NCBI GenBank assembly: GCA_950097015.1
Contig: CATNEN010000039.1
Coordinates: forward strand, 16,554,001-16,618,000
DNA from: Macrostomum hystrix
Taxonomy: Eukaryota > Animalia > Platyhelminthes
Reading direction: 5' to 3'
DNA length: 64,000 bases
Shown here: one piece after another, positions 201 through 41,808 of the stretch
Numbering within the stretch: position 1 is the first letter of the stretch
Layout: every line of letters starts with the position of its first letter
The notes under the pieces: generated by a model
What the model was told of the DNA's origin: nothing
The model's database searches: none
The model's input: only the letters and a program-made list of their open reading frames with translations
Translations under genes and position numbers: made by a program

Positions 201-866
201 TTAGCAAGCATCGCTAGCTGGCAGAGCTTGAATTGGTGTTTCTACTTTCTTCTCAACTAGGGCAGCGGCCAGCTCAGCGGCGTGATTGTCGCCGTTAGAA
301 TTGGCGCTGTCTCCGTTCAGCCTGCTGGATTTCTCCTCGGCTGAGTCGGCTGGCGGCTGAGCAGCGGGACGATCGGTGGAGTCCTTGCCGGCGTCGCCAT
401 TCGACTCTGACTTCTCGTCGCTGCTAGCAGGTTTAGCTTCCGTCTCTGGCTTATCACCATCGGCCTTCTTTTCTTCAACTACTGGCACCGGTTTCTCTTG
501 TTTGTCCGTGTCTTCTTTCTTAGCCTCCTCTGCCGTCCCCTCCTCCTCCTTCTTCTGTTCCTTAACAGATTCCTCTTTGTCCTCAGTCTTCTCGGCGCAA
601 TCTTCCTCTGCAGAAGCATTGGCCTTCTGTACAGCAGATTCAATCTCCATTTTCTCTTCAGCCTCCGGTTGAGCGGTTTCTGATTCCGGTTCCTTCTTGG
701 CGGCGGCTTTCTTTGTTGGCGAGGCGCGCGACTTCTTTGGCGACGGCTCAGCTGAAACTGGGGCAGATGTCGTTGCGGGCGGCGCCTCGTCCTCTTTGGC
801 GGCTAGACGCGACGAACGACGACGTGGCTCGGCAGCCTCGCCAACTGAGCGCTTTCCACGGGGCAT
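201..866 (-). CDS. HMGN-like basic-head/acidic-tail chromatin protein (221 aa, single coding exon)
   Basis: ATG at 866, stop at 201-203, GC-rich ORF in AT-rich flanks, with a splice-acceptor-like TTTTTTAAG about 15 nt upstream. The N-terminus MPRGKR...EPRRRSSRLAAK and later KKAAAK resemble HMGN1 (PKRK...EPKRRSARLSAK...PKKAAAK). The rest is E/K/D/A-rich and disordered. The ORF is well supported; the family call is tentative. Confidence 0.75.
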   Translation of the reverse strand: MPRGKRSVGEAAEPRRRSSRLAAKEDEAPPATTSAPVSAEPSPKKSRASPTKKAAAKKEPESETAQPEAEEKMEIESAVQKANASAEEDCAEKTEDKEESVKEQKKEEEGTAEEAKKEDTDKQEKPVPVVEEKKADGDKPETEAKPASSDEKSESNGDAGKDSTDRPAAQPPADSAEEKSSRLNGDSANSNGDNHAAELAAALVEKKVETPIQALPASDAC

Positions 867-4126: not shown

Positions 4127-4499
4127 CTACAGTTCGAGCTCAAAGTTTTCCAGCAACTGGGGAGACAGCTTCTAGCGTCAAATAGTAGCACTGTTTGTAC
4201 TTTTCTGAATAATGAACCTGGAACATTACATTTCAAGTTAGACTTTAAGGTTTAATTTCGTGATAAATGGGATCACAGTTATTTACGCATAGTGTCTCAC
4301 AAAATTAACTATTTCCTGTCTCTGTCCCGTCTGTGATTTTTTTATACTTCTGGCCTGGCTAATTTTGTGAGAAATTTTGTTAAAATAAAAAGCAACATAG
4401 ACCCCTGACTTGTTGATTTTTACATCTAAAACCATGCCCTTTAAATGAATTGCGTCTAAGTAATGTTTAAAGTTTAGTAGGACGAAATTGCAAAAAAAT

Positions 4500-6675
4500 G
4501 AGATGGGGAGATGTGAGGAGATAAGATGCAGTGTCGGAAGATGAGATCCAGTGTGGGAAGATGAGATGCAGTGTGGGAAGAGAAGATGCTGTGCGGGGAG
4601 AGAAGATGCAAGTGTGGGAAGATGAGATGCAGTGTGGGAAGAGAAGATGCAGTGTGGGAAGATGAGATGCAGTGTGGGAAGAGAAGATGCTGTGCGGGGA
4701 GAGAAGATGCAAGTGTGGGAAGATGAGATGCAGTGTGGGAAGAGAAGATGCAGTGTGGGAAGAGAAGATGCAGTATAGGAAGAGAAGATGCAGTGTGGGA
4801 AGAGAAGATCCAGTGTGGGAAGAGAAGATGCAGTGTGGGAAAAGAAGATGCAGTGTGGGAAGAGAAGATGCAGTGTGGGAAGATGCAGTGTGGGAAAAGA
4901 AGATGCAGTATGGGAAGAGAAGATGCAGTGTGGGAAGAGAAGATGCAGTGTGAGGAGATGTGATGCAGTGTGGGAAGATGCAGTGTGAGGAGATGTGATG
5001 CAGTGTGGGAAGATGAGATGCAGTGTGGGAAAAGAAGATGCAAGTGTGGGAAGATGAGATGCAGTGTGGGAAGAGAAGATGCAAGTGAGTGTGGGAAGAG
5101 AAGATGCAGTGTGGGAAGAGAAGATGCAGTGTGGGAAGAGAAGATGCAGTGTGAGGAGATGTGATCCAGTGTGGGAAGATGAGATGCAGTGTAGGACGAG
5201 AAGATGGAGTGTGGGAAGATGAGATGCAGTGTGGGAAGAGAAGATGCAAGTGAGTGTGGGAAGAGAAGATGTAGTGTGGGAAGAGAAGATGCAGTGTGGG
5301 AAGAGAAGATGCAGTGTGGGAAAAGAAGATGCAAGTTAGTGTGGGAAGAGAAGATGCAATGTGGGAAGATGCAGTGTGGGAAGAGAAGATGCAGTATGGG
5401 AAGAGAAGATGCAGTATGGGAAGAGAAGATGCAGTGTGGGAAGAGAAGATGCAGTGTGGGAAGAGAAGATGCAGTGTGGGAAGAGAAGATGCAGTGTGGG
5501 AAGAGAAGATGCAGTGTGGGAAGAGAAGATGCAGTATGGGAAGAGAAGATGCAGTGTGGGAAGAGAAGATGCAGTGTGGGAAGAGAAGATGCAGTGTGGG
5601 AAGAGAAGATGCAGTATGGGAAGAGAAGATGCAGTGTGGGAAGAGAAGATGCAGTGTGGGAAGATGCAGTGTGGGAAAAGAAGATGCAGTATGGGAAGAG
5701 AAGATGCAGTGTGGGAAGAGAAGATGCAGTGTGAGGAGATGTGATGCAGTGTGGGAAGATGCAGTGTGAGGAGATGTGATGCAGTGTGGGAAGATGAGAT
5801 GCAGTGTGGGAAAAGAAGATGCAAGTGTGGGAAGAGAAGATGCAGTGTGAGGAGATGTGATGCAGTGTGGGAAGATGAGATGCAGTGTGGGAAGAGAAGA
5901 TGCAAGTGTGGGAAGAGAAGATGCAGTGTGAGGAGATGTGATCCAGTGTGGGAAGATGAGATGCAGTGTGGGAAGAGAAGATGCAAGTGAGTGTGGGAAG
6001 AGAAGATGCAAGTGAGTGTGGGAAGAGAAGATGCAAGTGAGTGTGGGAAGAGAAGATGCAAGTGAGTGTGGGAAAAGAAGATGCAGTATGGGAAGAGAAG
6101 ATGCAGTGTGGGAAGAGAAGATGCAGTGTGAGGAGATGTGATGCAGTGTGGGAAGATGCAGTGTGAGGAGATGTGATGCAGTGTGGGAAGATGAGATGCA
6201 GTGTGGGAAAAGAAGATGCAAGTGTGGGAAGAGAAGATGCAGTGTGAGGAGATGTGATGCAGTGTGGGAAGAGAAGATGCAAGTGTGGGAAGAGAAGATG
6301 CAGTGTGAGGAGATGTGATCCAGTGTGGGAAGATGAGATGCAGTGTGGGAAGAGAAGATGCAAGTGAGTGTGGGAAGAGAAGATGCAAGTGAGTGTGGGA
6401 AGAGAAGATGCAGTGTGGGAAGAGAAGATGCAGTGTGGGAAGAGAAGATGCAGTGTGGGAAGAGAAGATGCAGTGTGGGAAGAGAAGATGCAGTGTGGGA
6501 AGAGAAGATGCAGTGTGGGAAGTGAAGATGCAGTGTAGGGAGATGAGATGCAGTGTAGGGAGATGAGATGCAGTGTTAGGGAGATGAGATGCAGTGTAGG
6601 GAGATGAGATGCAGTGTAGGGAGATGAGATGCAGGGTAGGGAGATGAGATGCAGTGTAGGGAGATGTGATGGGAG
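4500..6675. repeat. Minisatellite, about 20-bp unit AAGAGAAGATGCAGTGTGGG
   Basis: Direct tandem periodicity; it accounts for the repetitive ORFs at 4467-6525. Confidence 0.97.
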
Positions 6676-7175: not shown

Positions 7176-8006
7176 ATGGCCAGCAATATCGCACCTACTG
7201 CTTTGGCACCGCTCAGCCACAAGAAGAATTTGAACAAGAAGCGTCGGCAGCACAAAAAACCGGAGCAAGTACAAACTGGGGAGACAGTCCAGCAGACGAC
7301 GACAGACAACCCGGTGGGCCGGCTGCAGCAGCTGAGTCAGCATCGATTCTGGCCGCTGCCCTTCTACACTTTCGAGTGCCAAAACGAAGACGATCCAAGC
7401 CGGCGACGATTCACCTGCTCCGTTCAACTGCAAGGCCAGAAGGCCAAAGGCTCCGGAAATTCTAAGAAGCTGGCGAAGCGAACAGCCGCCCTGGCAATGC
7501 TGAAGCTGACTGAAGACTCTCCAGACAGATTCCAGACGGTGTCTCAAGACCAAGCAAAGCAGCCATCGGCTGTGGTCCCTCTGGACGAGAGCAGATTCCA
7601 GGGGCTTAAATCGTCGAAGCGGTTACAATCGGCAGCTCGATGCGGCGGCGAGGTTGGAGGTCTTTTTCGCGGCGTACGAAACCGCAAAGCCGGAGCGATC
7701 CTGCCGCCGATCGAGGCGCCGACGGAGAACGCCAGCTCGGGCAGCGCCAGCGACCAGCTGCTTGAACTCAGTCGTCAGCACCGATTCAGCTTGTCCTTCC
7801 TTGACTCCATCTCCAGTTCTGATGCTCCTGGCTCTATTCAACGTCGCGCAGTCGTTAAACTGTCCACCATGCCGACAATCGTTGCTGTTGGCAGCGGAGC
7901 AAACGTCGGGATGGCGCGCGAGCAGGCGTGCCGAGCGGCAATGGAATACCTGTGCTTGCTCACGCGGGAATCCACCGGCTTACCGGCTGCGGGCAAGAAA
8001 GCCTGA
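7176..8006 (+). CDS. PACT/TRBP/Loquacious-family dsRNA-binding protein, intronless, two dsRBDs
   Basis: First ATG at 7176. Canonical dsRBD NPVGRLQQLSQHRFWPLPFYTF...GSGNSKKLAKRTAALAML, and a C-terminal type-B dsRBD LLELSRQHRFSLSFLD...KLSTMPTIVAVGSG...AREQACRAAMEYL resembling PACT/TRBP dsRBD3. AATAAA near 8031. Confidence 0.88.
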   Translation: MASNIAPTALAPLSHKKNLNKKRRQHKKPEQVQTGETVQQTTTDNPVGRLQQLSQHRFWPLPFYTFECQNEDDPSRRRFTCSVQLQGQKAKGSGNSKKLAKRTAALAMLKLTEDSPDRFQTVSQDQAKQPSAVVPLDESRFQGLKSSKRLQSAARCGGEVGGLFRGVRNRKAGAILPPIEAPTENASSGSASDQLLELSRQHRFSLSFLDSISSSDAPGSIQRRAVVKLSTMPTIVAVGSGANVGMAREQACRAAMEYLCLLTRESTGLPAAGKKA

Positions 8007-10236
8007 GCGATCGAGTCTAAAGATGTCTAAAAATAAAAGAACTCAACATGACTAAGCGGAGCATTGAGATCATGAGCGCAGTATTTTAGTTTTCTCAATC
8101 TTTCCCTGCTATGCGCCAAATACGATTCGTGCTCAATCGCAAACTGAAATGAAACAACCATGTTTCATAGAAATGTTCATATAAACGTAGAACAAAAATG
8201 AAGCGAAGCCAAATGTGCCAAAGCTATATACAAATGTGGAGCATGCTTCAATTTAAGTTTGTGAAAGCTTTAAAAAAGATACTGGTTTCATATTTTTTTC
8301 AGCATTTCATAATTTAAGCTAATTTATAGCTTGGTAATACATTATTGAGCAGTGTAATTTGCAGTGTGGTAGTTTACTATCAAGGCGAAGATCATAGCAT
8401 GGAAATCAACAGAATTGGTTATTTTAGGTGTTATGTCCCGTGACTGATGTGACTGATATCGCCCCTTTTGATCGCGTCTCGCTTAAGAAGCGTTGCCGGC
8501 TCCATGCGATGGAGAACCGAGCCTCATCCCTCCATTCCCTAACTACCCCACCTTGTTATTGGTAGCTTGGGTGTGATTGAGTGACCCCGATCCCATGGAC
8601 CAAGGGGAAAGACCAGGGTTGTGAGAAGTTAGGACCTGCTAGACAAGGCTGCCACCGGCAGCCACCTATACGGTACAGCACAACTGGCTGAACCTAACGA
8701 AATGTGGCTTCAGCTCTAAAAGAGAGGATTTGCTTAAGCTCATCTCCAAGGGGCCATGGCCAAAGATTGGGCCTCTATGCGAGGTATTCTTAAGGAGTAG
8801 ACGGTTCAGCAACACAGAGGACTTTTGCATAGGGGATTCTTGGGATGCAGCTAAGACATAAACGGAAAGCCCAATCCAATGTCGAGAGTTTCCAAAAAGA
8901 GACAGCTAGCCGACGTGTACGTTCTGTTGTGAAAATTAATAACACGGAACACGGAGATTTTTGTCTATAAGCCAAGCGCGTGAGTCGCGCGGAAAGTTTT
9001 GTTTTGGCCAATAAAGCTGGGGATCGAGCTCGTTCATTTATACGCCGAGAGAAGGGTGACGAAAGTTCTAGAAAACAAGTAAACAATTGTCATGATCGAA
9101 CTTTCTAGAATCCTATAACCTTAGTGCGCTGTTTCAATATGCACAACAACAGAGAGTACCATGAAGTCTAACCGATGGACTCAGCGATCCGGTGGAGACT
9201 GTGCTTAGAGGGCGCCGAAAAGGTTTTATAGGAACTGTACACAGGTTAGAGTCCTGACCTGGTCCTGAACGTCAAATGAACGGAAGGTTCTGATAAGGAC
9301 CAAACAGCATTCGAAGATAGGAGACGGGACGAATGGTCGGAGACGAAGATAAGATATCGGTAGGGGTCCACCGAATGGTCTGATCGAATCCACGCGCCGC
9401 ACCACTTGCTTAAATAGAGCCCAGAGTCACGCTCGCTCACGCCGTGATCGCGTGATCAGCCCGAGCCTGACCTTCTTGTCAAGCAGCCAATTACAAGCAA
9501 ATCACATGCTTCGCCAGCCGATCGGTGATTGGTTAGAAGGTTAATGGTCAATACATATTAAGGTCACGACAAAGCCTACTAAATATACCACTGCTCCTTG
9601 AAAACATTGTGGGTATACGCGTAAGTATACGCACATTTTGAATATCTGCTGCCGAAAAATACTAGTGGTGATATAAAATTTTGGTTTTATCTAATCTAAA
9701 ATAATATGATAATTTAATATAATTTTAATATTTAAAGGGTCATTTACAAAGTCAATATTTGAATTTTTATACTTCGTACCAATTGTACCATTTATAGTGT
9801 GTCCGGAAATTTAGCATTGAAAATTGTTTTATTTTTTTTTCGCTTTTTCAACAAGGTATTAAGTTATTTATTTATAAGATAGAGAAAAAACTTTTTTTCT
9901 GAATTAATGACCTAAAATGTGTACGTTATAAGTAACCACCAGGAACAAATTATTACTTGTTACTTTGTTACTTTTTCGTAGAAAATCGTGCTACCAGATT
10001 TTATGCTATAAACTATAAACTTTTCAGCTTTTCTGCTATAAATTATAAACTTTTTGCCTAAAATTTATCTGCTTAATACTATTTTCTCTTAAATCTCGCA
10101 CAAACTTCTGCTTGTATTTTTCTACTGGCTGCTTAAAGTATCAGCTATCTAGATACTAGAAGGTTCATTCAACTTTATTACACTCTGATTTTTTCTAGGG
10201 TAGTCTAGCAAGCTAATTAATTAGTAGGCCCCTACC

Positions 10237-13200
10237 ATGCAGTTGCAGACTATTTTTGTAGGACAACTCCTCGCTTCACTTATTGTTTGCTTCAGTTGTG
10301 TAGAAGTGACATCTAACAAAGGAAATAAATACTACACTAGACTGCAGATTGATGATAAATCTGTTGTAAAAAATGCTGCTTCGATGTTTTATGGTATTGG
10401 AGCTATTAGTGGTGGAGGTGTAAGTCAAGTCAATTTTTTTAAGTTGCTTTCATTTATAAACTGTGTATTTTGGCCAATGACTATATTATGGAGGCATTGC
10501 ATATTAATAATATTAGCTTTTGTTCCTATAGAGCAAAATATAGTACATTAATTCTTAATCATTTATCCTCAATTTTTTAATTATTGGATAGTGGACACTT
10601 TGTTAAATCACATGGATACAGAATTTCAAATTTTATATATAATCATAAAAGTTAAAACATACTTAACAGCTGTGCATATAATTTAGCAATTCAAAACTTT
10701 TGTATTTACACATAAACTAGGCCTACTTTTTTAATAACTTGTCAAATTCAGATGTATAGAAAATATGTATTTATAAGATTTATAATATATATAGCATCTG
10801 CTGTTGTTTTGCAAGTGGACTGAATCTGTTTGATGCCAAAAGGGTTATGGCAATACATAATAAAGGCTGAAATGACTAGCTACCAACTTTCAGTACATTA
10901 GAAAGTATTTTTTTCTGCTTAGGAAATGCCTAATTATTGTAACTAATTATAATAATCTTGCTAGGGTCTTTGATAACACCCTAATCTGATGTAATTGGGC
11001 TATCTTTATTTTATATACCTAACTTAACTGAGACAAACTTGATCTAGGCATTTTTAAGAAACATACACTTCTCTTTTATTTTGATTACTTCTAACAGGCA
11101 ACATCGAAACTGCTACAAAACTATCTGCCAAGTCAGAGAGCTGAAATATTAGATTACTTGTTTCTGGTAAGTATTTAAGAGTTTGGTCATATGCTAAATA
11201 AGCAGAAAGCAATTTTTTTACCTAAAAAGGAAACTAATGTAAGCAATTTTACCTTATTGGATTCAAAATTAAACTACAACCTCTCTTTTCTAACAGCCAA
11301 ACTTTGGAGCCTCGCTTCATATGCTCAAAGTGGAGATTGGAGGCGACTCTCAGAGCACAGAGGGTACCGAAGCATCGCACATGCATCACAGCTGGGATTT
11401 GAATTACAATCGCGGCTACGAGTGGTGGCTAATGAAGGAGGCTAAGAAGGTTAAATACATGTTCCTAAATCGATAACATTTTACTGAATTAGTGCTTGAC
11501 TCTTGCTATAGTAAAGCTTAGTTAGCAGCAGTTCCACCCTAGCTGTAATAAAGCTATGCCCCAAAAAGGAAAAGTTATACTTATAGCTATTTAGCTAGTC
11601 TAATCTTCAGCATGTTTACTTATTTTCGTTTTTTTAAGTTTTACTAATTTGATCACCATTTTTTCAGAGGAATCCCAACATCACACTCTATGGCCTGCCC
11701 TGGGCTTTTCCCGGCTGGGTTGGAAACGGTACGTTGAGTCCATACAATTATCCGAGCTTAACGGCAGATTACGTGCTCAAATGGGTACAGGGAGCCAAGG
11801 ACTATTACAATCTTACCATCGACTACCTGGGTGTAAGTTCCTCAGTGATTGCTATTTAGACGTGAAACTCGGTGAAGCTCAGTCTTGGTGTAACCTTCAA
11901 AATAACAAAATAAACTCGTCAGATCTGGAACGAGCGAGCTTACGATGTGAAATACGTTCGCATACTTCGCGCCGTACTCGACCACGCCGGCTTTACAAAC
12001 ACTCGCCTAGTAGTTGGCGACGGCGACTGGAGCCCGGCTAACGATGTCCTGACTGATCCGCAGTTCGCCGCGGCAACTTTCGCTCTTGGCGCCCATTATC
12101 CCGGCACTTTGTCATCGGACGAAGCTAAGCGTTCTGGCAAGCCGTTGTGGGCGTCGGAAGATTTCAGCACATTTAATGACGACATTGGAAGCGGATGCTG
12201 GGCTAGGATATTAAATAGGAACTACGTTGACGGCGGCATGACTAGTAGCATTGCGTGGAATCTGGTGGCAGCTTATTATGATAACCTTCCATTTCCTCGC
12301 TGCTCTCTGATGACCGCTAATGAGCCCTGGTCTGGTCACTACGAGGTTACTGGGCCGCTTTGGATGACCGCTCATACAACTCAGTTTGCATGGCCTGGCT
12401 GGTATTATCTACCAGTTGGCGGCGGCTCCGGACGACTTAACAATGGCGGCAGCTACGTGGCCCTGACCGATCCTGGAGTTAAAGAATTGACACTGATTTT
12501 CGAAACTATGGTAAGGTTAAGAAGGCCAGAGCTTTGATTTTCATAAGAGATCGAGTATCACTTACTAGCTTTATCTAGGAAATTTCCACCGAAGGAGGAG
12601 TTCCACTCTCTTGCTACATTGAAATCTCCGCCTAAGGAGGAGTTCCACTCTCTTGCTACATTGAAATTTCCGCCTAAGGAGGAGTTCCACTCTCTAGCTA
12701 ATACTGCTAATATCCCATGCCTAGTTTATTTTTTACTATTTTTAGAGCCACGATCATTCAGAGTGCATCAGGCCGGCACTGCCGCCGTATAACGTGACGC
12801 CACAGAATGTGACCATCAGTTTATCTGGCGCCTTTGCTTCCATAACTCAACTATACTATTGGAAATCTGTGCTCAGTTACAAGCAGGGTGTTCCATCCAC
12901 CTATTTTGTTAAGCAGGCACCTTTGAAGGTAAGAATTAAATAGTAATATTAATTTCTCAGTCTTTTAGACGAAGCATTGTCTCCCCAAAAGTTGCAGCGT
13001 TTGTTTACCCAAGTCAATCAGACTGTTACTCTTCTGTACTCAAATTTCCAGGTTAACTCCGGTAAATTCACGCTATTCCTAGACGTCGACGTTGTAGTTA
13101 CATTGTCAACTGTTGCCACGGCCAACAAAGGACAGAGATCTCAGCCGCCGCCATCGAAGCCGTTCCCACTGCCGTACAGTGACAATTTCCAGAGTGCGTG

Positions 13201-16200
13201 TCATTTTTTAAATTACACTTTTCGATTTTTCGGCTGTCGCTCTGATCGTGTCTAGAAAGATTATAACAGCTTTTGTCCTATAATTACGCACGTTTTTTTC
13301 GTAAATCACTTATTTTCCATTAGTTATTAATCGCACACAAACTCTAGAACGTTTTTATTGTACCTACCCACCCCAATCAATGTACACTCGCCCGGCCAAA
13401 CATTTCAACCATCCCACCCCAATCAATGTACACTCGCCCAGCCAAACATTTCAACCACCCACCCCAATCAATGTACACTATTCCCGCCAAATCTTCTCTC
13501 AACCACCCATCCCAATCAATGTACACTCGCCCAGCCAAACATTTGAACGACCCACCCCAATCAATGTACACTAGTCCCGCCAAAGCTTCTCTCAACCACC
13601 CACCCCAATCAATGTACACTCGCACCGCCAAAGCTTCTCTCAACCACCCACCCCAATCAATGTTCTCTCGCCCAGCCAATCAAATTACTATTGACCAACC
13701 AAGTTCTTGCATGTCGCCCCAGATTACCAGCCTGGCTCGCATCCGTTAAATCTGGTGCCTCAGGTTGGCAGCTTTGAAATTTCGTCTGTCAATAGTGTTT
13801 CAAAGTCAAAGCAGCAGCAGCAGCAGCTCTGCTTGTTGCAGACTGTTCTGCAACAGCCGGTCGACTGGTGTCAACAATCTCAGCCTGTGGCAGTTATTGG
13901 CAATTATAATTGGTGAGATATTTTAGTAGAGATTTGGTATCGTCTTCGCAATGATTTTCTGTGTATTTTTATCTAACAGACAAACCAGTTGATCAATAGC
14001 ACGGTCAGAGCGCAGCCAATAATAAAATACTTGCCATACTATTATTAGTAGTACAGTCAGATTCGCAAATAACTGATTTATTTTAGACCTAAGCTTGGGC
14101 CAGTCGCCAAATTATCTAACGCCACAGGTTGGCTTCTTTGAAGCTGCTTACATTGGCCCTTTTAAATCATCAGCATCGGCCGATAAAAGTTTGTCACTTT
14201 GTCAAGTTGTGCAAAAGATTACATTGCACTGGTGCCCAATCTATCTAACTAGTCCGTTCACCGTTATGGGCAACTGGTTTGTTCTGCGCTTGCGTTCCTA
14301 GTGTTGCCTGTTGTTTCAAACTTAACTTCTCTTCTCTACCTCTTTCCTCATATTCCATACATGAACAAAACTTCTAAAATATAATAATTAACTCAAAATA
14401 TCTGCCTTTCCTCTCTCCTCTCCACTCTCCTCCCTTCCTCTCTTCTCACCCTCACTCCCTCACTCTCACTCCCTCTCCTCCCTTCCTCTCTTCTCACCCT
14501 CACTCCCTCACTCTCACTCCCTCTCTCCTCCCTTCCTCTCCCTTCTATTCCTCTGCATCTTCCATCTCTCCTCTGGTCTATCTCCCTCTGCCCTGTCCCC
14601 TTTCTTCCTTTTATTTTTCCTCTTCCATCTCTTACTTGTTCTTGTATAATCATTCACTATGCACAGCTTATCTGCATATCTAACCGAATATAAACAAACT
14701 AGGATCCGAATTTTCACTAATCCATCAAATCGTCGCATTGAACTCTTCTTTGGCAGGTCAGACGTCACAGTGTCCGCGTCCGTATTGGTACCTTCCGTTA
14801 ATTCAACAACCGGCATCTTTATCGCCGCCCGCATCGACCAAGGCGGTTGCGGCGCCTTCCAGTCCAAAGGCCTCTTCTTGTGGCTTTTCCCTGGTAGCAA
14901 CCAGTACTCTGTAACTAACGACCTGGGTGAGTGCAGACTTGCTTAAATCTATAACAGAAATCTACCGACTAGACAGACGTCTACAGACTAGACAGAAATC
15001 TACAGACTAGACAGAAATCTACAGACTAGACAGAAATCTACAGACTAGACAGACATCTACAGACTAGACAGACATCTACAGACTAGACAGACATCTACAG
15101 ACTAGACAGACATCTACAGACTAGACAGAAATCTACAGACTAAACAGACATCTACAGACTAGACAGAAATCTACAGACTAGACAGACATCTACAGACTAG
15201 ACAGAAATCTACAGACTAGACAGAAATCTACAGACTAAACAGACATCTACAGACTAGACAGACATCTACAGACTAGACAGACATCTACAGACTAGACAGA
15301 CATCTACAGACTAGACAGAAATCTACAGACTAAACAGACATCTACAGACTAGACAGAAATCTACAGACTAGACAGACATCTACAGACTAGACAGACATCT
15401 ACAGACTAGACAGAAATCTACAGACTAAACAGACATCTACAGACTAGACAGAAATCTACAGACTAGACAGACATCTACAGACTAGACAGAAATCTACAGA
15501 CTAGACAGACATCTACAGAATAGACAGAAATCTACAGACTAGACAGACATCTACAGACTAGACAGACATCTACAGACTAGACAGACATCTACAGACTAGA
15601 CAGACGTCTACAGACTAGACAGACATCTACAGACTAGACAGACGTCTACAGACTGGACAGACATCTACAGACTAGACAGACGTCTACAGACTGGACAGAC
15701 ATCTACAGACTAGATAGATATCTACAGACTAGACAGACATCTACAGACTAGACAGAAATCTACAGACTAGACAGACATCTACAGACTAGACAGACATCTA
15801 CAGACTAGATAGATATCTGCAGACTAGACAGACAGACTGTGCTGTTAGCTCTAGAAATGTGAGTCGTTAAATGTTATGTATCATTTTTCAGCTCAAACTA
15901 AGAAGATAAAAGGAGGCAGTTACACGTTCGGCTACGATACCTGGGTACAGCTGACGCTATCTATTCAGGTCAGCGCTCTGTGCTTTCTCTGCTTTCTTAA
16001 AATGCATGATTCTCAGATTCGAACCCCCGACCAATTTGTAATGATGGTCGGATCTTCAATCACAGACTATTAAACAAGCGATATTAAAATAAAAGCTTAA
16101 CAATCATTTGAATTTGCCTTTGCAGAACGGCAAATACACAGCCCAGATAGCCAACCAGACGGTTGCGAACAGTGAAACTTTGCCTAGCAACACCCCAAGC

Positions 16201-16380
16201 ACTGGCTTCGTCGGCTTGGGCTCCGAAAATTTCGGTCTGGCCTGCTATACCAACTTGACCATCGGTGCCAATGGTCCAGATGTCCCACTGAACAATGACG
16301 ATAGCCTGGAGTACAGATCGGACTCAGTGCCGATGATAAAGCTCGTTGAAGCTCAACCGATCGATCAGGATCATCTTTGA
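10237..16380 (+). CDS. GALC: Galactocerebrosidase (GH59); exons 10237-10419, 11098-11166, 11297-11449, 11668-11832, 11923-12510, 12746-12928, 13052-13193, [13723-13912 OR 14087-14276], 14757-14926, 15892-15968, 16126-16380
   Basis: Signal peptide, then [50 protein letters not shown], catalytic WNE and LWASEDFST motifs, and FPLPYSDNF. All junctions are GT-AG and phase-consistent. Confidence 0.96.
12579..12698. repeat. About 3 copies of a 42-bp tandem unit in a GALC intron
   Basis: GAAATTTCCGCCTAAGGAGGAGTTCCACTCTCTTGCTACATT repeated. Confidence 0.85.
13362..13682. repeat. Intronic minisatellite, about 40-45 bp (CCACCCACCCCAATCAATGTACACTCGCCC...)
   Basis: About 7 degenerate tandem copies. Confidence 0.9.
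13723..13912 (+). CDS. GALC: GALC alternative exon 8A (190 nt, phase 1 to 2)
   Basis: CAG acceptor and GTGAGA donor; encodes [20 protein letters not shown]...[27 protein letters not shown]. Confidence 0.9.
14087..14276 (+). CDS. GALC: GALC alternative exon 8B (190 nt, phase 1 to 2)
   Basis: TTTATTTTAG acceptor and GTTTGT donor; encodes [20 protein letters not shown]...[27 protein letters not shown], paralogous to 8A. Confidence 0.82.
14955..15836. repeat. Intronic minisatellite, 19-bp unit AGACATCTACAGACTAGAC
   Basis: Direct tandem periodicity. Confidence 0.97.
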
Positions 16381-17117: not shown

Positions 17118-18518
17118 ACTTCAGTATCTGATTCCTATGCTTCAGGATCTGATTCCTATACTTCAGTATCTGATTCCTATACTTCAGGATCTGATTCCTA
17201 AACTTCAGGATCTGATTCCTATGCTTCAGGATCTGATTCCTATACTTCAGTATCTGATTCCTATACTTCAGGATCTGATTCCTATACTTCAGGATCTGAT
17301 TCCTAAACTTCAGGATCTGATTCCTATACTTCAGTATCTGATTCCTATACTTCAGGATCTGATTCCTAAACTTCAGGATCTGATTCCTAAACTTCAGGAT
17401 CTGATTCCTATGCTTCAGGATCTGATTCCTAAACTTCAGGATCTGATTCCTAAACTTCAGTATCTGATTCCTAAACTTCAGGATCTGATTCCTAAACTTC
17501 AGGATCTGATTCCTATGCTTCAGGATCTGATTCCTATGCTTCAGGATCTGATTCCTATGCTTCAGGATCTGATTCCTATGCTTCAGGATCTGATTCCTAT
17601 GCTTCAGGATCTGATTCCTATGCTTCAGGATCTGATTCCTATGCTTCAGGATCTGATTCCTAAACTTCAGGATCTGATTCCTATGCTTCAGGATCTGATT
17701 CCTTTACTTCAGGATCTGATTCCTAAACTTCAGGATCTGATTCCTAAACTTCAGGATCTGATTCCTAAACTTCAGGATCTGATTCCTAAACTTCAGGATC
17801 TGATTCCTATGCTTCAGGATCTGATTCCTATGCTTCAGGATCTGATTCCTAAACTTCAGGATCTAATTCCTAAACTTCATGATCTGATTCCTAAACTTCA
17901 GGATCTGATTCCTAAACTTCAGGATCTGATTCCTAAACTTCAGGATCTGATTCCTATGCTTCAGGATCTGATTCCTATGCTTCAGGATTTGATTCCTTTA
18001 CTTCAGGATCTGATTCCTAAACTTCATGATCTGATTCCTAAACTTCAGGATCTGATTCCTATGCTTCAGGATCTGATTCCTAAACTTCAGGATCTGATTC
18101 CTAAACTTCAGGATCTGATTCCTAAACTTCAGGATCTGATTCCTATGCTTCAGGATCTGATTCCTAAACTTCAGGATCTGATTCCTAAACTTCAGGATCT
18201 GATTCCTAAACTTCAGGATCTGATTCCTATGCTTCAGGATCTGATTCCTTTACTTCAGGATCTGATTCCTTTACTTCAGGATCTGATTCCTAAACTTCAG
18301 GATCTGATTCCTAAACTTCAGGATCTGATTCCTAAACTTCAGGATCTGATTCCTATGCTTCAGGATCTGATTCCTAAACTTCAGGATCTGATTCCTATGC
18401 TTCAGGATCTGATTCCTATGCTTCAGGATCTGATTCCTTTACTTCAGGATCTGATTCCTAAACTTCAGGATCTGATTCCTATGCTTCAGGATCTGATTCC
18501 TAAACTTCAGGATCTGAT
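17118..18518. repeat. Minisatellite, 21-bp unit CTTCAGGATCTGATTCCTAAA
   Basis: About 66 tandem copies; source of the LQDLIPK ORF. Confidence 0.97.
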
Positions 18519-19344
18519 CGCAATTTTTGCAGACAAATTTTTGTTTATCAAATTTTAATTCGGCAATTGTTCATCGCTTTTTTGCAAATTTATTTTGGAA
18601 AAATAATCAAATGTTTCACATGATTAGCCATGCTATTTTAGAACTTACTTATTCTACAGTAATATTCTGAGTAACACTCGATCTTCATGTATTTGAAAAT
18701 CTCTGATTGTGCCAACCTCAGTAAATTGTATTTTATCTCAAAATTTTCTAATTCTCTACTGTGAGTAGGGTAGTGCGAATTTTTTTGCCAAAATGGTTAC
18801 CACAAATTTCTTTTACTTTAGCATAAAAAAATTAAAGAAAATTGACAACGACGATTGTAAAATGTAGCAAAAACTAGCTATTTAATCATCTCTTTGACTT
18901 ATTCATTTTTCCTAACTGAATTGGAAAACCAAGTTTTGCTAAGTAAAGGTACAAAAATACATGACCTTATTAGGTTTGAGTTTCAATCAGGAAAACATGT
19001 TTATATTATCTAGATTGTGTATAACTGGCCAATTAGGGCGGACAATGCAAGTTTCATCAGCGCCGTTTCTTTTTGTAAAGTAAAACCTGCTTTTACCTAT
19101 TCCATCTACCTTCCTCCCTCGTCACACGTGAGTATTCTGTGCATTTTTTCATCCTAAATCTCTTGCTTTTCTTGTAAACAGAAGTGGAAAAGTTCGTCTT
19201 ATTTTCGCGTGTTGATTGTAGTTCTGAGCATTTTGTTGTCAATATTCTTTTTGTGATTTGATGTTTAAAGGTGCACTTGCAAAGAGAGATCAGCAAACGA
19301 GGCTATGAGAAATTGGGTTGATAAGACAGTAGTGGATCTAGAGG

Positions 19345-22300
19345 AGACAGTGGATAGGGAAGATTGGTCGGGAGAGAGACAGCTGATGGGGAAGATTGAT
19401 CGGGAGAGAGACAGCTGATGGGGAAGATTGATCGGGAAAGAGACAGCTGATGGGGAAGATTGATCGGGAAAGAGACAGCTGATGGGGAAGATTGATCGGG
19501 AGAGAGACAGCTGATGGGGAAGATTGATCGGGAGAGAGACAGCTGATGGGGAAGATTGATCGGGAAAGAGACAGCTGATGGGGAAGATTGATCGGGAGAG
19601 AGACAGCTGATGGGGAAGATTGATCGGGAGAGAGACAGCTGATGGGAAAGATTGATCGGGAAAGAGACAGCTGATGGGAAAGATTGATCGGGAAAGAGAC
19701 AGCTGATGGGGAAGATTGATCGGGAAAGAGACAGCTGATGGGGAAGATTGATCGGGAAAGAGACAGCTGATGAGGAAGATTGATCGGGAAAGAGACAGCT
19801 GATGGGGAAGATCGATCCGGAGAGAGACAGCTGATGGGGAAGATTGATCGGGAGAGAGCTGATGGGGAAGATTGATCGGGAAAGAGACAGCTGATGGGGA
19901 AGATTGATCGGGAAAGAGACAGCTGATGGGGAAGATTGATCGGGAAAGAGACAGCTGATGAGGAAGATTGATCGGGAAAGAGACAGCTGATGGGGAAGAT
20001 TGATCGGGAGAGAGACAGCTGATGGGGAAGATTGGTCGGGAGAGAGACAGCTGATGGGGAAGATTGATCGGGAGAGAGACAGCTGATGGGGAAGATTGAT
20101 CGGGAAAGAGACAGCTGATGAGGAAGATTGATCGGGAAAGAGACAGCTGATGGGGAAGATTGGTCGGGAGAGAGACACCTGATGGGGAAGATTGATCGGG
20201 AGAGAGACAGCTGATGGGGAAGATTGGTCGGGAGAGAGACAGCTGATGGGGAAGATTGATCGGGAGAGAGACAGCTGATGGGGAAGATTGATCGGGAGAG
20301 AGACAGCTGATGGGGAAGATTGATCGGGAAAGAGACAGCTGATGGGGAAGATTGATCGGCAAAGAGACAGCTGATGAGGAAGATTGATCGGGAAAGAGAC
20401 AGCTGATGGGGAAGATTGGTCGGGAGAGAGACAGCTGATGGGGAAGATTGATCGGGAGAGAGACAGCTGATGGGGAAGATTGATCGGGAAAGAGACAGCT
20501 GATGGGGAAGATTGGTCTGGAGAGAGACAGCTGATGGGGAAGATTGATCGGGAGAGAGACAGCTGATGGGGAAGATCGATCGGGAGAGAGACAGCTGATG
20601 AGGAAGATTGATCGGGAGAGAGACACCTGATGGGGAAGATTGATCGGGAGAGAGACAGCTGATGGGGAAGATTGGTCGGGAGAGAGACACCTGATGGGGA
20701 AGATTGATCGGGAGAGAGACAGCTGATGGGGAAGATTGGTCGGGAGAGAGACAGCTGATGGGGAAGATTGATCGGGAGAGAGACAGCTGATGGGGAAGAT
20801 TGGTCGGGAGAGAGACAGCTGATGGGGAAGATTGATCGGGAAAGAGACAGCTGATGGGGAAGATCGATCCGGAGAGAGACAGCTGATGGGGAAGATTGAT
20901 CGGGAGAGAGCTGATGGGGAAGATTGATCGGGAAAGAGACAGCTGATGGGGAAGATCGATCGGGAGAGAGACAGCTGATGGGGAAGATCGATCGGGAGAG
21001 AGACAGCTGATGGGGAAGATTGGTCGGGAGAGAGACACCTGATGGGGAAGATTGATCGGGAGAGAGACAGCTGATGGGGAAGATTGGTCGGGAGAGAGAC
21101 ACCTGATGGGGAAGATTGATCGGGAGAGAGACAGCTGATGGGGAAGATTGGTCGGGAGAGAGACAGCTGATGGGGAAGATTGATCGGGAAAGAGACAGCT
21201 GATGGGGAAGATTGATCGGGAAAGAGACAGCTGATGGGGAAGATCGATCCGGAGAGAGACAGCTGATGGGGAAGATTGATCGGGAGAGAGCTGATGGGGA
21301 AGATTGATCGGGAAAGAGACAGCTGATGGGAAAGATTGATCGGGAAAGAGACAGCTGATGGGGAAGATTGATCGGGAAAGAGACAGCTGATGGGAAAGAT
21401 TGATCGGGAAAGAGACAGCTGATGGGGAAGATTGGTCGGGAGAGAGACACCTGATGGGGAAGATTGATCGGGAGAGAGACAGCTGATGGGGAAGATTGGT
21501 CGGGAGAGAGACAGCTGATGGGGAAGATTGATCGGGAGAGAGACAGCTGATGGGGAAGATTGGTCGGGAGAGAGACAGCTGATGGGGAAGATTGATCGGG
21601 AAAGAGACAGCTGATGGGGAAGATCGATCCGGAGAGAGACAGCTGATGGGGAAGATTGATCGGGAGAGAGCTGATGGGGAAGATTGATCGGGAAAGAGAC
21701 AGCTGATGGGGAAGATTGATCGGGAAAGAGACAGCTGATGGGGAAGATCGATCGGGAAAGAGACAGCTGATGGGGAAGATCGATCGGGAGAGAGACAGCT
21801 GATGGGGAAGATTGATCGGGAAAGAGACAGCTGATGGGGAAGATTGATCGGGAAAGAGACAGCTGATGGGGAAGATTGATCGGGAAAGAGACAGCTGATG
21901 GGGAAGATTGATCGGGAAAGAGACAGCTGATGGGGAAGATTGATCGGGAAAGAGACAGCTGATGGGGAAGATCGATCGAGAGAGAGACAGCTGATGGGGA
22001 AGATCGATCGGGAGAGAGACAGCTGATGGGGAAGATTGATCGGGAAAGAGACAGCTGATGGGGAAGATCGATCGAGAGAGAGACAGCTGATGGGGAAGAT
22101 TGATCGGGAAAGAGACAGCTGATGGGGAAGATCGTTCGGGAAAGAGACAGCTGATGGGGAAGATCGATCGGGAGAGAGACAGCTGATGGGGAAGATCGAT
22201 CGGGAGAGAGACAGCTGATAGGGAAGATTGATCGGGAGAGAGCTGATGGGGAAGATTGATCGGGAAAGAGACAGCTGATGGGGAAGATCGATCGGGAGAG

Positions 22301-22460
22301 AGACAGCTGATGGGGAAGATCGATCGGGAGAGAGACAGCTGATGGGGAAGATTGATCGGGAAAGAGACAGCTGATGGGGAAGATTGGTTGGGAGAGAGAC
22401 AGTCTGGATTGGGAAGACAGACAATCTGGATTGGGAAGACAGACAATCTGGTTTGGGAAG
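19345..22460. repeat. Minisatellite, 32-bp unit AGCTGATGGGGAAGATTGATCGGGAGAGAGAC
   Basis: About 95 tandem copies; source of the ORFs longer than 1000 aa. Confidence 0.97.
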
Positions 22461-23404
22461 ACGGACAGTATATTGGGAAGATCGATTTAGAAATTGTTTT
22501 TGTGAGACGGGTTAACAAAAAAATTAGTTTATTGTTTAATAATTTAAGCAAAAACATGGATTTTTAATGAAGCGGTTCTTTTGTCACGAATAGCGAATGA
22601 ATTAATTCAGGAAGGAAAATCTCATGGATAACAATAGAAATGGCAGTCAAGTTAGTTTATTAAAACACTGGCAATATTTCCAAACATTCGAGTGTCGTTA
22701 GAAAAGCCAATTTTCCCGGCCTCGAGGTGTGAAATTTCTGCCTCTAATTTCGGTGTTGAGTTTTCACGAGCGGAAATGAGATTTTCCTAAAATGAAAACT
22801 TTGGGGGGAGTAAAATATATTTTTTTCTATTAAATCCTCTTTTTAGGATATGGAAGAAATTTAATAAAAATCCTTGTGGAATTATTTGGCGCAGTCGTGA
22901 TTTATTATTCTATGCTAGTAGCCAGTTTTTCAATTAGTCTTTGGCGGAAGAAAGGTGTCACTTTTCAACAGTTTTTTATATAAAATGATAAAATAGTAAT
23001 ATGAAACTGCTAAAATTACTATTTTTATTAACCTCAAGTCAATGCCTTAGTTTGCGATCCGCATGAATGAGCCAATAGGGATTAGCTTTTTTTCGCATGA
23101 AAATATGTTAGTAACTTTTATGGCTTATAACTAGCAGAGCGCTAATCCTATTGACTTGTTGTACAACATTTCGAGATTGAAGAATAGTGTATTTTTGTTT
23201 TTACTCTTGTATTTTATGTTTTGTCATGCATAGGCTGCATGCATGATCTATAATCAGCAATGGAATATTGAAAGGTGGCAATTCTACGCAAGCCTTCTTT
23301 TGTCTATTTCTGTTCCTTTTCTGGGAATTCAGAAATCCTTTTATTTTACTTAACAATGTGCGCTTAGTTCTTCAACTCTAATTAGTGCTAGAGGGTGAAA
23401 CAAG

Positions 23405-24200
23405 AAGGAGATAATGTGGGAGAAGGATGAGATTATGTGGGAGAAGGATGAGATTATGTGAGAGAAGGATGAGATTATGTGAGAGAAGGATGAGATAATG
23501 TGAGAGAAGGATGAGATTATGTGAGAGAAGGATGAGATAATGTGAGAGAAGGATGAGATTATGTGAGAGAAGGATGAGATTATGTGGGAGAAGGATGAGA
23601 TAATGTGGGAGAAGGATGAGATTATGTGAGAGAAGGATGAGATTATGTGAGAGAAGGATGAGATTATGGGAGAGAAGGATGAGATTATGGGAGAGAAGGA
23701 TGAGATTATGGGAGAGAAGGATGAGATTATGTGAGAGAAGGATGAGATTATGTGAGAGAAGGATGAGATTATGTGAGAGAAGGATGAGATTATGTGAGAG
23801 AAGGATGAGATTATGTGAGAGAAGGATGATATCATGGGAGAGAAGGATAAGATTATGGGAGAGAAAGGGTGTGAGATGGTGTGAGAAAGGGATGAGATTG
23901 TGTGGGAAAAGTATGAGATGGTGTCAGAAATGGATGAGATGGTGTGAGAAAAGGATGAGATGGTGTCAGAAAGGGATGAGATGGTGTGAGAAAAGGATGA
24001 GATGGTGTGAGAAAGGGATGAGATGGTGTGGGAAAAGTATGAGATGGTGTCAGAAAGGGATGAGATGGTGTGAGAAAAGAATGAGATGGTGTGAGAAAAG
24101 GATGAGATGGTGTGAGAAAAGTATGAGATGGTGTTATAAAAGGATGAGATGGTGTGAGAAAATGATTATATTATGTGTAGAGAAGGATGAGATTGTCTGA
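23405..24200. repeat. Minisatellite, 21-bp unit GAGAAGGATGAGATTATGTGA, shifting to a variant unit after about 23830
   Basis: Direct tandem periodicity. Confidence 0.95.
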
Positions 24201-28478: not shown

Positions 28479-28894
28479 TTAGGGAGTTGTGCCAAAAGTA
28501 CCATTGATTTGTTCTGCGCTCGAAATTAAAACAAGCCTTTGAATTTTTCCCTACAAACGTAGAAACTTTCTGTGAAAAAAGTTAGTTTGGCTTTCTTGTC
28601 ATTTTTTTCTTTGAGAAAAAAGGTTTCACTAGCACTTCAGTTGCCTAATCATCTGAACATAGTGCTTCAACCTAGTGCTCCTGGCATAACTCAAGGTAGA
28701 CTCTTAAAGTGGACAAGAGATGCCTAATTATTTTGAACATTTAGGCGAATAACATGTCTGAGAAAGTGATCCACTTATTAGCACATCGAGCCTCTGTTTA
28801 GCAGTAGGAGATTTTCATTTACTTTTTCATAATTCTTCTCCTAAAAGTTCAACTTTCAATTATCCTCAGTTTTAGAGACTTCAGGAACTGGCTA

Positions 28895-30072
28895 ATCCCA
28901 GATTCTTCAGGATCTGACACAATCCCAGATTCTTCAGGATCTGACACAATCCCAGATTCTTCAGGATCTGACACAATCCCAGATTCTTCATTATCTGACA
29001 CAATCCCAGATTCTTCATTATCTGACACAATCCCAGATTCTTCATTATCTGACACAATCCCAGATTCTTCATTATCTGACACAATCCCAGATTCTTCAGG
29101 ATCTGACACAATCCCAGATTCTTCAGGATCTGACACAATCCCAGATTCTTCAGGATCTGACACAATCCCAGATTCTTCATTATCTGACACAATCCCAGAT
29201 TCTTCATTATCTGACACAATCCCAGATTCTTCATTATCTGACACAATCCCAGATTCTTCATTATCTGACACAATCCCAGATTCTTCATTATCTGACACAA
29301 TCCCAGATTCTTCATTATCTGACACAATCCCAGATTCTTCATTATCTGACACAATCCCAGATTCTTCATTATCTGACACAATCCCAAATTATTCATTATT
29401 TTACACAACCCAGATTCTTCATTATCTGACACAATCCCAGATTATTCATTATCTGACACAATCCCAGATTCTTCATTATTTGACACAATCCCAGATTCTT
29501 CATTATCTGACACAATCCCAGATTCTTCATTATCTGACACAATCCCAGATTCTTCATTATCTGACACAATCCCAGATTCTTCATTATCTGACACAATCCC
29601 AGATTCTTCATTATCTGACACAATCCCAGATTCTTCATTATCTGACACAATCCCAGATTCTTCATTATCTGACACAATCCCAGATTCTTCATTATCTGAC
29701 ACAATCCCAGATTCTTCATTATCTGACACAATCCCAGATTCTTCATTATCTGACACAATCCCAGATTATTCATTATTTGACACAATCCCAGATTCTTCAT
29801 TATCTGACACAATCCCAGATTCTTCATTATCTGACACAATCCCAGATTCTTCATTATCTGACACAATCCCAAATTCTTCATTATCTGACACAATCCCAGA
29901 TTCTTCATTATCTGACACAATCCCAGATTATTAAGGATCTGACACAATCCCAGATTCTTCATTATCTGACACAATCCCAGATTATTAAGGATCTGACACA
30001 ATCCCAGATTCTTCATTATCTGACACAATCCCAGATTCTTCATTATCTGACACAATCCCAGATTATTCTGGA
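28895..30072. repeat. Minisatellite, 27-bp unit ATCCCAGATTCTTCATTATCTGACACA
   Basis: About 43 tandem copies. Confidence 0.97.
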
Positions 30073-30459
30073 TCTAGAACTGACTAGAACAGCTCATATT
30101 GACTCACGTGATATTGATTCTCGTGTTTTTCATATCCTTTTTTCAGTCCTTGCCTTTTCCGCATTTTAATATGTTCCTTGCCTCTCAATTTGTTCCGAAT
30201 CCCAAGTGGTAACGCGTTGTCCCGTAATGCGACCAAGACTAGCGATCATGATCTGGGACAGCTGCAGTGGAAACGATGACATTCTAAAATAAAAAACTGT
30301 TAATTTTATTCTGTTGTCATATGGCTTCTACTATCGTGCTAGTCTTGTCTTTGTTTTTTTCAATAATTGATTGTGCCGAATACTGACAAAGATAAATTGA
30401 TTTTATATTATTGCAGAGTAAAGGAGATGGATGGTGTGGCAGGTAGAGAGGGGGGTGGG

Positions 30460-41769: not shown

Positions 41770-41808
<39 letters not shown>

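What the first reader, a model, noticed from the sequence alone, without database searches (positions are those of the whole stretch)
13723..14276. Mutually exclusive tandem exons in galactocerebrosidase that swap a lectin-domain segment near the active site
Seen: two paralogous exons of exactly 190 nt, both phase 1 to 2, both stop-free with GT-AG sites, 174 nt apart. They share P.....PQVG.FE, L.Q.V.Q....WC and V.GN..W but are otherwise very divergent. Including both or neither frameshifts the gene, so a full-length protein needs exactly one. Known: the matching segment of mammalian GALC (APNFADQTGVFE...LRQVLNQRPITW...IGDYNW) starts the lectin domain and, as I recall, carries a Trp loop that reaches the substrate pocket. 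Inference: one gene makes two enzymes with different glycolipid preference or tissue use. I know of no description of this for GALC.
Basis: partly seen in the sequence, partly recalled or inferred. Interest (0 to 1): 0.85.

Follow-up and report, generated by a model that had tools for sequence, protein, structure and literature searches.

The report
Swappable exon pair in flatworm galactocerebrosidase
An invertebrate (reportedly Macrostomum flatworm) gene for the lysosomal lipid-sugar enzyme galactocerebrosidase has two alternative versions of one exon, used one at a time, that swap the part of the enzyme touching its substrate pocket and its saposin helper protein.

Summary
Exons 13723-13912 (8A) and 14087-14276 (8B) are both 190 nt, 174 nt apart, with AG/GT sites. 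Each is open only in the phase-1 frame, and the peptides are 34% identical (E 5e-10).

Both fit positions 2-47 of Pfam's GALC C-terminal lectin domain. Both also fit a profile I built from 35 homologues: 8A 51 bits, 8B 36 bits, shuffles at most 12.

Transcript contigs show exon 7>8A>exon 9 in one run and 8B>exon 9 in two other runs. None joins 8A to 8B. The 7>8B joint was not seen.

Including both exons gives an immediate TGA, and skipping both shifts the frame. This is very probably a genuine mutually exclusive pair.

By alignment, the swapped piece equals mouse GALC residues 480-540. That stretch holds pocket Trp524, kept in both exons, and the saposin-A contacts R520 and T523, which read Q..D in 8A and I..H in 8B.

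I also found a 43-nt element in the 8A-8B intron. It pairs very strongly with intron 7 (z about -10), which would loop out 8A. Alternatively it pairs with the 8B donor site. That suggests a competing-RNA-structure switch.

I found no published description for GALC. Earlier notes of this scan flag many exclusive-exon arrays in this genome, none at this gene. Any functional difference between the isoforms is untested.

The parts
10237..16380 (+). GALC-like (GH59) gene: signal-peptide exon to stop codon (approximate outer limits)
   Evidence: ORFs. Pfam GH59 catalytic, central and C-terminal lectin domains found exon by exon. Introns 11832>11923, 12509>12745 and 12926>13050 confirmed by GT..AG joints.
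13050..13193 (+). Constitutive exon 7 (ends in phase 1; ...[13 protein letters not shown])
   Evidence: Aligns to mouse SKPFPTNYKDDFN.
13231..13278 (+). 'Dock': intron-7 element complementary to the hub in the 8A-8B intron
   Evidence: Duplex -46.5 kcal/mol against shuffles of -22.8 +/- 2.4 (z -9.8, 0/60). Pair probability 0.996 in the fold of 13150-14800. Present in both MFE and centroid of 13194-14086, fragment z -4.74. Not a genomic repeat.
13366..13679 (+). C/A-rich 48-nt tandem repeat (6.8 copies) just upstream of the 8A acceptor; role unknown
13723..13912 (+). Alternative exon 8A, closer to the family consensus; loop reads QQPVDWCQQ
   Evidence: Pfam PF21708 positions 2-47, 31.8 bits. 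51.3 bits to the homologue-segment profile. A contig in run X3 carries the exon-7 end + 8A + exon 9 + next exon.
13976..14018 (+). 'Hub': element in the 8A-8B intron with two alternative partners, the dock and the 8B donor
14087..14276 (+). Alternative exon 8B, more diverged; loop reads [11 protein letters not shown]
   Evidence: PF21708 positions 2-45, 14.4 bits. 35.9 bits to the segment profile, shuffles at most 11.9. Contigs in runs X1 and X2 join 14275/6 to 14756/7.
14262..14287 (+). 8B 5' splice-site region, complementary to the 5' half of the hub (perfect 12-mer across the exon/intron border)
   Evidence: I7, 12/12. Duplex -26.8 kcal/mol, reached by 9/1000 shuffles. Helix present in MFE and centroid of 13913-14300.
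14757..14926 (+). Constitutive exon 9 (enters in phase 2)
   Evidence: Matches mouse GALC chain 4ccc positions 529-580. PF21708 positions 49-102, 55.3 bits. Joints.

Best explanation
**Origin and splicing.** A tandem exon duplication inside a GH59 galactocerebrosidase gene produced two 190-nt alternative exons, and each mRNA includes one of them. Each exon enters in phase 1 and leaves in phase 2. Using both gives TGA at the 8A/8B joint, and using neither shifts exon 9 into a frame with a stop. Only single-exon mRNAs therefore encode the full enzyme. The rest would be truncated and probably removed by nonsense-mediated decay.

**What differs between the two enzymes.** They share the catalytic TIM barrel and beta-sandwich. 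They differ in about 63 residues at the start of the lectin domain, equivalent to mouse residues 480-540. That stretch holds the loop that puts Trp524 into the substrate pocket. In mouse it also bonds saposin A through R520 and T523. Both exons keep the Trp. 8A reads Q-P-V-D-W there and 8B reads I-T-L-H-W.

**Inferred consequence.** The isoforms probably differ at the rim of the substrate or lipid channel and in how they dock a saposin-type activator. The catalytic chemistry is probably unchanged.

**Inferred choice mechanism.** A 43-nt hub in the 8A-8B intron either pairs with a dock in intron 7 or pairs with the 8B donor site. The first pairing loops out 8A and brings exon 7 close to 8B. The second masks 8B, so that 8A is used. 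The two pairings overlap on the hub and so cannot coexist.

**Shown:** exon anatomy, homology, frame logic, three of the four expected junctions, location in the protein, and the complementarity statistics.

**Inferred:** the 7>8B junction, strict exclusivity, the RNA switch, and any functional difference.
For: - **Anatomy and frames:**
- **Gene identity:** one search gives PF02057 at 160 bits, PF17387 at 59.7 bits and PF21708 at 55.3 bits. Searches match mouse GALC.
- **Catalytic residues:** the big exon contains WNE and SEDF. These align with mouse index 170 (E182) and index 246 (E258). The E182 numbering is confirmed in PMC5764952.
- **Both exons still fit the family:** one search gives 51.3 and 35.9 bits against shuffle maxima of 7.0 and 11.9.
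- **RNA:** run X3 has a 633-nt contig made of the exon-7 end, 8A, exon 9 and the next exon. Runs X1 and X2 have contigs joining 8B to exon 9. Contig depths are similar to those of constitutive exons in the same runs. No 8A>8B joint was seen. The one listed 8B variant (14196 A>G) is synonymous by my codon count.
- **Structural mapping:** the chain index plus 12 gives R520, T523 and W524, exactly the residue identities named in PMC5764952. PMC13187500 lists Trp540 in human precursor numbering, which is +16.
- **RNA structure:**. The dock is unique in the genome.
- **Gene specificity:** the only other GALC-like gene in the genome has a single fused exon for this region, so the pair is specific to this gene.
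Against: - The 7>8B junction was not observed. Both 8B contigs start inside 8B.
- All reads evidence comes from assembled contigs of runs whose RNA nature is partly a guess. Such contigs can show presence only.
- 8B scores below Pfam's threshold on its own (14.4 bits), has a weaker donor, lacks the conserved Pro before the Trp, and sits on a branch twice as long as 8A's. This would also fit relaxed constraint.
- No relative's genome could be examined, so neither the exon pair nor the dock/hub pairing has comparative support.
- The 13913-14300 fragment as a whole folds no better than shuffles (z -0.26). The hub/8B-donor pairing is only moderately unusual (p about 0.009), and I found it after looking.
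Confidence: 0.75

Rival explanations
1. 8B is a decaying or regulatory ('poison' or unproductive) duplicate. It is sometimes spliced in but does not yield a functional second enzyme. 8A is the only working version.
For: 8B is the more diverged copy. It scores 14.4 bits to Pfam against 31.8 for 8A. Its branch length is 1.83 against 0.97. Its donor (GTTTGT) is weaker. Its upstream junction is unobserved.
Against: All 63 codons are open only in the correct phase. 8B scores 35.9 bits to a family-segment profile against at most 11.9 for shuffles, and keeps PQVG.FE, L.Q.V, WC and V.GN-W. The 8B>9 contigs are as deep as constitutive-exon contigs in two runs in which no 8A contig was reported.
Confidence: 0.1
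2. Both isoforms are made, but the swap is functionally neutral. It would be a fixed duplication maintained only because the frame logic forces a choice of one, with no difference in substrate, activator or tissue use.
For: The pocket Trp and the structural core motifs are kept in both exons. No data here address function. This genome seems unusually rich in exclusive-exon arrays according to the scan's own unchecked notes.
Against: Divergence is concentrated in a loop that contacts substrate and saposin in the mouse enzyme, with a D/H charge change at the T523 position. A strong, specific intronic pairing (z -9.8) suggests regulated choice. Runs differ in which exon their contigs carry.
Confidence: 0.15
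3. 8B belongs to a different transcript: either an alternative start inside the 8A-8B intron, or inclusion after 8A. It would then not be an exclusive alternative to 8A.
For: The 8B contigs begin at 14156 and 14211, so what lies upstream of 8B in the mRNA was not seen.
Against: 8A followed by 8B gives an immediate TGA. 8B has a good AG acceptor with a T-rich tract and the same phase as 8A. No contig covers intron sequence upstream of 8B (depth 0 at 13952-14063 in all runs).
Confidence: 0.05

Closest known systems
Mutually exclusive exons made by tandem exon duplication (for example human tandem-duplicated exon substitutions, PMC9741552 and PMC8373072; human MXE landscape, PMC5740500)
   Same: Adjacent homologous exons of identical length and phase. 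One is used per mRNA. The isoforms are identical except for one homologous segment. Frame incompatibility penalises double inclusion or double skipping.
   Different: GALC is absent from the supplementary lists of those human catalogues as far as they are held as text, and I found no paper reporting it for GALC in any organism. Here the host is an invertebrate, and the swapped segment lies in a lysosomal glycosidase's accessory domain.
Competing-RNA-structure control of exclusive exons (Dscam1 docking site and selectors; ATE1 exons 7a/7b, PMC7797038; the evolutionary model in PMC6071210)
   Same: Long-range intronic complementarity in which one element has alternative, mutually exclusive partners. 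Pairing loops out or masks one exon.
   Different: Here the shared element lies between the two exons. Its partners are an upstream intronic site and the 5' splice site of the downstream exon, not one docking site with a duplicated selector before each exon. There is no conservation or experimental support yet.
Mouse and human galactocerebrosidase (PDB 3ZR5, 4CCC; GALC-SapA complex, PMC5764952)
   Same: The same three-domain GH59 architecture. Catalytic WNE and SEDF glutamates are present. The lectin-domain loop with the pocket Trp is present in both isoforms.
   Different: Mammals have one version of this exon. The flatworm versions replace the saposin-contacting R520 and T523 by Q and D (8A) or by I and H (8B).

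Membership tests
GH59 galactocerebrosidase | GH59 catalytic TIM-barrel domain (PF02057) | tested here: met
   Exon 11923-12507 scores 160.1 bits, cut-off 27. It is 54-59% identical to animal GALCs.
GH59 galactocerebrosidase | Catalytic acid/base and nucleophile glutamates (mouse E182, E258) | tested here: met
   WNE and SEDF align with mouse chain index 170 and 246, which are residues 182 and 258. Numbering checked against PMC5764952.
GH59 galactocerebrosidase | Central beta-sandwich (PF17387) and C-terminal lectin domain (PF21708) | tested here: met
   PF17387 at 59.7 bits (exon 6). PF21708 at 55.3 bits (exon 9), 31.8 bits (8A), 14.4 bits (8B, below cut-off on its own) and 17.8 bits (last exon).
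GH59 galactocerebrosidase | Beta-galactosylceramidase activity | not testable with these tools
   Needs an enzyme assay.
Mutually exclusive tandem-duplicated exons | Adjacent homologous exons with the same length and phase | tested here: met
Mutually exclusive tandem-duplicated exons | Each exon spliced alone between the flanking constitutive exons | tested here: inconclusive
   8A: both junctions seen. 8B: only 8B>9 seen, in two runs; 7>8B not covered.
Mutually exclusive tandem-duplicated exons | No, or only unproductive, transcripts with both or neither exon | tested here: inconclusive
   No 13912>14087 or 13193>14757 joint in 4 runs, but contigs cannot show absence. Both events create premature stops.
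Mutually exclusive tandem-duplicated exons | Both exons conserved in related species | not testable with these tools
Only a near-identical 'organism B' run shows 8B>9.
Competing-RNA-structure (docking/selector-type) splice switch | Intronic complementarity far above chance, positioned to loop out one exon | tested here: met
   Dock 13231-13278 with hub 13978-14018 gives -46.5 kcal/mol, z -9.8. Pair probability is 0.996. Fragment z is -4.74.
Competing-RNA-structure (docking/selector-type) splice switch | A second, mutually exclusive pairing that favours the other exon | tested here: inconclusive
   Hub 13976-14001 with the 8B donor 14262-14287 gives -26.8 kcal/mol, reached by 9/1000 shuffles. 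The helix is in the MFE and centroid structures. It was found post hoc, and the fragment z is -0.26.
Competing-RNA-structure (docking/selector-type) splice switch | Covariation across species, or an effect of disrupting and compensatory mutations | not testable with these tools
   No relatives' intron sequences were available.

The most novel reading that the evidence does not exclude
A lysosomal glycolipid hydrolase is retargeted by exon choice. A bistable intronic RNA switch (hub with dock, or hub with the 8B donor) selects one of two lectin-domain loops. The two GALC isoforms then pair with different saposin-type activators, of which the genome has at least three saposin loci, or work on different glycolipids or at different pH. 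This would be a splice-encoded enzyme/activator specificity code not described for any GH59 enzyme.
Probability: 0.25. Interest if true: 0.7.

Novelty: new member of a known kind. Interest (0 to 1): 0.5.

Why it matters
GALC is the Krabbe-disease enzyme. How its lectin domain and the Trp524 loop contribute to substrate delivery by saposin A is known from only one complex structure.

A natural pair of isoforms that differ only in that loop region is a ready-made experiment. It can show what the loop decides: activator choice, lipid access, or pH dependence.

It also adds a clean two-exon case, with a statistically strong long-range RNA pairing, to the few examples of structure-guided exclusive splicing outside arthropods and vertebrates. 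It remains one instance of a well-known mechanism, in a genome that seems rich in such events.

Tried and rejected
- **PDB search with the exon peptides.** phmmer of the 62-aa peptides against PDB found no GALC match. Only antibody light chains came up, at E about 1, which is chance. Mapping had to go through exon 9 and the Owenia homologue.
- **The search for homologous proteins.** Searches with 8A and with 8B shared no words with anything. Given the tool's length window, this says little. A third search, with a 337-aa ORF meant to check the organism's identity, found nothing. The 'Macrostomum' label therefore comes only from earlier scan notes and I did not verify it.
- **The look-up of encoding contigs was closed.** I could not inspect the GALC loci of Owenia, Candidula or Mya for a duplicated exon.
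- **Two segment copies in one protein.** None of the 150 best homologues carries two tandem copies of the segment. This is uninformative, because gene models would not include both.
- **Other ways to enforce exclusivity.** Steric hindrance is unlikely because the 8A-8B intron is 174 nt. U2/U12 incompatibility is unlikely because all donors are GT with no U12-type consensus.
- **Haplotype or assembly-artefact origin.** Rejected: the copies are 34% identical and lie in tandem on one contig.
- **Dock as a repeat element.** Rejected: it is unique in the genome.
- **Other inverted repeats (I1, I3, I4, I19).** These are AT-rich or weak, with pair probability of about 0-0.17. Not pursued.
- **Papers.** Deane 2011 and Hill 2013 (PNAS) are not held.
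- **Joined isoforms not built.** No full-length isoform was folded or compared with structures, and all searches were exon by exon.

Full report
**1. What is in the sequence**

The + strand between about 10.2 and 16.4 kb carries a compact, multi-exon gene. Its exons match the three Pfam domains of galactocerebrosidase:
- GH59 catalytic domain, PF02057, 160 bits, in exon 11923-12509.
- Central domain, PF17387, 59.7 bits, in exon 12745-12926.
- C-terminal lectin domain, PF21708, 55.3 bits, in exon 14757-14926.

Exon 9 matches mouse GALC crystal-structure chains directly. The large exon contains WNE and SEDF. These align with the mouse acid/base E182 and nucleophile E258 (numbering confirmed by PMC5764952).

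Transcript contigs confirm introns 11832>11923, 12509>12745 and 12926>13050.

**2. The two exons**

- 8A is 13723-13912 and 8B is 14087-14276. Each is exactly 190 nt, with AG acceptors and GT donors, and they lie 174 nt apart.
- Each is open in one frame only, the frame that continues exon 7 (phase 1) and feeds exon 9 (phase 2).
- The peptides are 34% identical (E 5e-10).
- The genome holds no further copy of either exon.
- Both map to positions 2-47 of the lectin-domain profile. 8A scores 31.8 bits, above the cut-off; 8B scores 14.4 bits.
- Against a profile I built from this segment in 35 homologues, 8A scores 51.3 bits and 8B 35.9 bits. 500 shuffles of each peptide reach at most 7.0 and 11.9 bits.
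- 8A is closer to the consensus. In a poorly resolved tree both fall with annelid and mollusc sequences, and 8B's branch is about twice as long.
- Double inclusion creates TGA at the joint (TG + A). Skipping both puts exon 9 in a frame that stops at 14914.

**3. RNA evidence**

I laid 3,351 letters, all from assembled contigs.

- **Run X3 (organism A):** a 633-nt contig reads the last 13 nt of exon 7, then 8A, exon 9 and the next exon.
- **Runs X1 (organism A) and X2 (organism B):** contigs join 8B at 14276 to exon 9 at 14757 with GT..AG ends.
- **Depth:** these contigs are about as deep as constitutive-exon contigs of the same runs.
- **Not seen:** no contig joins 8A to 8B or exon 7 to exon 9, and none covers the 8A-8B intron.
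- **Gap:** no contig reaches the 8B acceptor, so 7>8B is inferred from frame and homology.
- **Variant:** the single listed variant in 8B (14196 A>G) is a third-position, synonymous change by my count.

Three of the runs are RNA only by guess, although intron-less GT..AG joints argue for cDNA. Contigs cannot prove absence.

**4. Where the swapped piece sits**

The Owenia homologue P0010 aligns end to end with mouse GALC chain 3zr5_A. Chain index plus 12 gives the published numbering. Index 170 is E182. Indices 508, 511 and 512 are R, T and W, which are R520, T523 and W524.

- The alternative region equals mouse residues about 480-540.
- PMC13187500 lists Trp540 (human precursor numbering, +16, so W524) among the residues forming the active site and substrate pocket.
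- PMC5764952 reports that SapA Q24 hydrogen-bonds GALC R520 and T523, that Q24K blocks binding, and that the interface is electrostatic and pH-dependent.
- At these positions 8A reads Q-P-V-D-W-C-Q-Q and 8B reads I-T-L-H-W-C-P-I-Y.

The Trp is therefore kept, and its surroundings, including both saposin-contact positions, are exchanged, with an Asp/His difference next to the Trp. That this changes activator docking or lipid access is inference.

The genome has saposin-B domains at three or more loci, so partner diversity exists.

**5. How one exon may be chosen**

Steric hindrance and U2/U12 incompatibility do not fit. The 8A-8B intron is 174 nt and all donors are ordinary GT.

A screen for complementarity found a 43-nt hub (13976-14018) in the 8A-8B intron, with two possible partners.

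*Hub with the intron-7 dock (13231-13278):*
- The duplex energy is -46.5 kcal/mol. Dinucleotide shuffles of the intron give -22.8 +/- 2.4, with none of 60 as good (z -9.8).
- The helix has pair probability 0.996 in a fold of 13150-14800.
- It appears in both the MFE and centroid structures of 13194-14086, whose z-score is -4.74.
- The dock is unique in the genome.
- This pairing loops out 8A and brings exon 7's donor near 8B.

*Hub 5' half with the 8B donor region (14262-14287):*
- The pairing includes a perfect 12-mer spanning the exon/intron border.
- The energy is -26.8 kcal/mol, reached by 9 of 1000 shuffles.
- It appears in the MFE and centroid of 13913-14300, although that fragment as a whole is not unusually stable (z -0.26).

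Across the whole region, the dock and the 8B donor are the two best partners of the 8A-8B intron. The two pairings overlap on the hub. This suggests a bistable switch: hub with dock gives 8B, and hub with the 8B donor gives 8A.

This is a model. No comparative or experimental test was possible.

**6. Context**

- A second, diverged GALC-like gene lies on contig C2. It encodes this region and exon 9 in one fused exon, has no duplicate, and has Thr in place of the pocket Trp.
- No protein more than 59% identical to the large exon exists in the 1.8-billion-protein library. The nearest named homologues are molluscs, an annelid, fish and Physarum.
- Earlier notes of this scan call the genome a Macrostomum flatworm and report many exclusive-exon arrays with Dscam-like pairing elsewhere in it. 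I did not verify the taxon; my one attempt found nothing. None of those notes concerns this gene.

**7. Literature**

- No paper held in the library links GALC with mutually exclusive exons. A fish 'galcb' hit is an ordinary skipped exon.
- GALC is absent from the held supplements of two human MXE/tandem-exon catalogues.
- Nothing was found on Macrostomum and exclusive exons.

**8. Limits**

No full-length isoform was searched, folded or docked.

**Verdict**

This is a real and well-formed pair of mutually exclusive exons in GALC. RNA evidence supports both exons. The pair sits exactly on the loop that touches the substrate pocket and saposin, and a statistically strong candidate RNA switch lies beside it.

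It is a new instance of a known mechanism. The functional claim is open.

Noticed in passing
window 201-866 (-): A 221-aa ORF starting MPRGKRS...RRRSSRLAAK, followed by an acidic and lysine-rich tail. It resembles the HMGN nucleosome-binding motif. An earlier first-reader note (s1-845672) already flags it.
   Followed up: no
G000:C2:6829700-6833400 (-), locus L011 about 7840-8180: A second, diverged GALC-like gene, 42-48% identical in the catalytic exon. The exon-8 and exon-9 equivalents are fused into one exon, there is no duplicate, and the pocket Trp is replaced (PPIDTC).
   Followed up: partly
window 13366-13679 and 14954-15834: The GALC introns carry long tandem repeats: a C/A-rich 48-mer in 6.8 copies ending 43 nt before the 8A acceptor, and a 19-mer in 46 copies in intron 9. 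A CT-rich tract at 14413-14540 follows 8B. Possible splicing-regulator binding platforms; untested.
   Followed up: no
window 4467-6566, 17137-18558, 19265-22557, 23350-24200, 28849-30169 and others: The window is packed with long minisatellite arrays that stay open in several frames on both strands (ORFs up to 1084 aa). They look like repeats rather than genes.
   Followed up: no
window 33344-34552 (-) and 41445-41897 (-): A 402-aa intronless ORF with the look of a rhodopsin-type GPCR, and an exon with an ETS DNA-binding motif (LWQFLLE...ICWTG...EFKL). Judged by eye only.
   Followed up: no
G000:C39:661955-664326 (-): A prosaposin-like locus with at least eight tandem SapB_2 domains, five of them with identical scores, on the same chromosome-scale contig. 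Further saposin loci lie at C39:11.40 Mb and C33:0.58 Mb.
   Followed up: no
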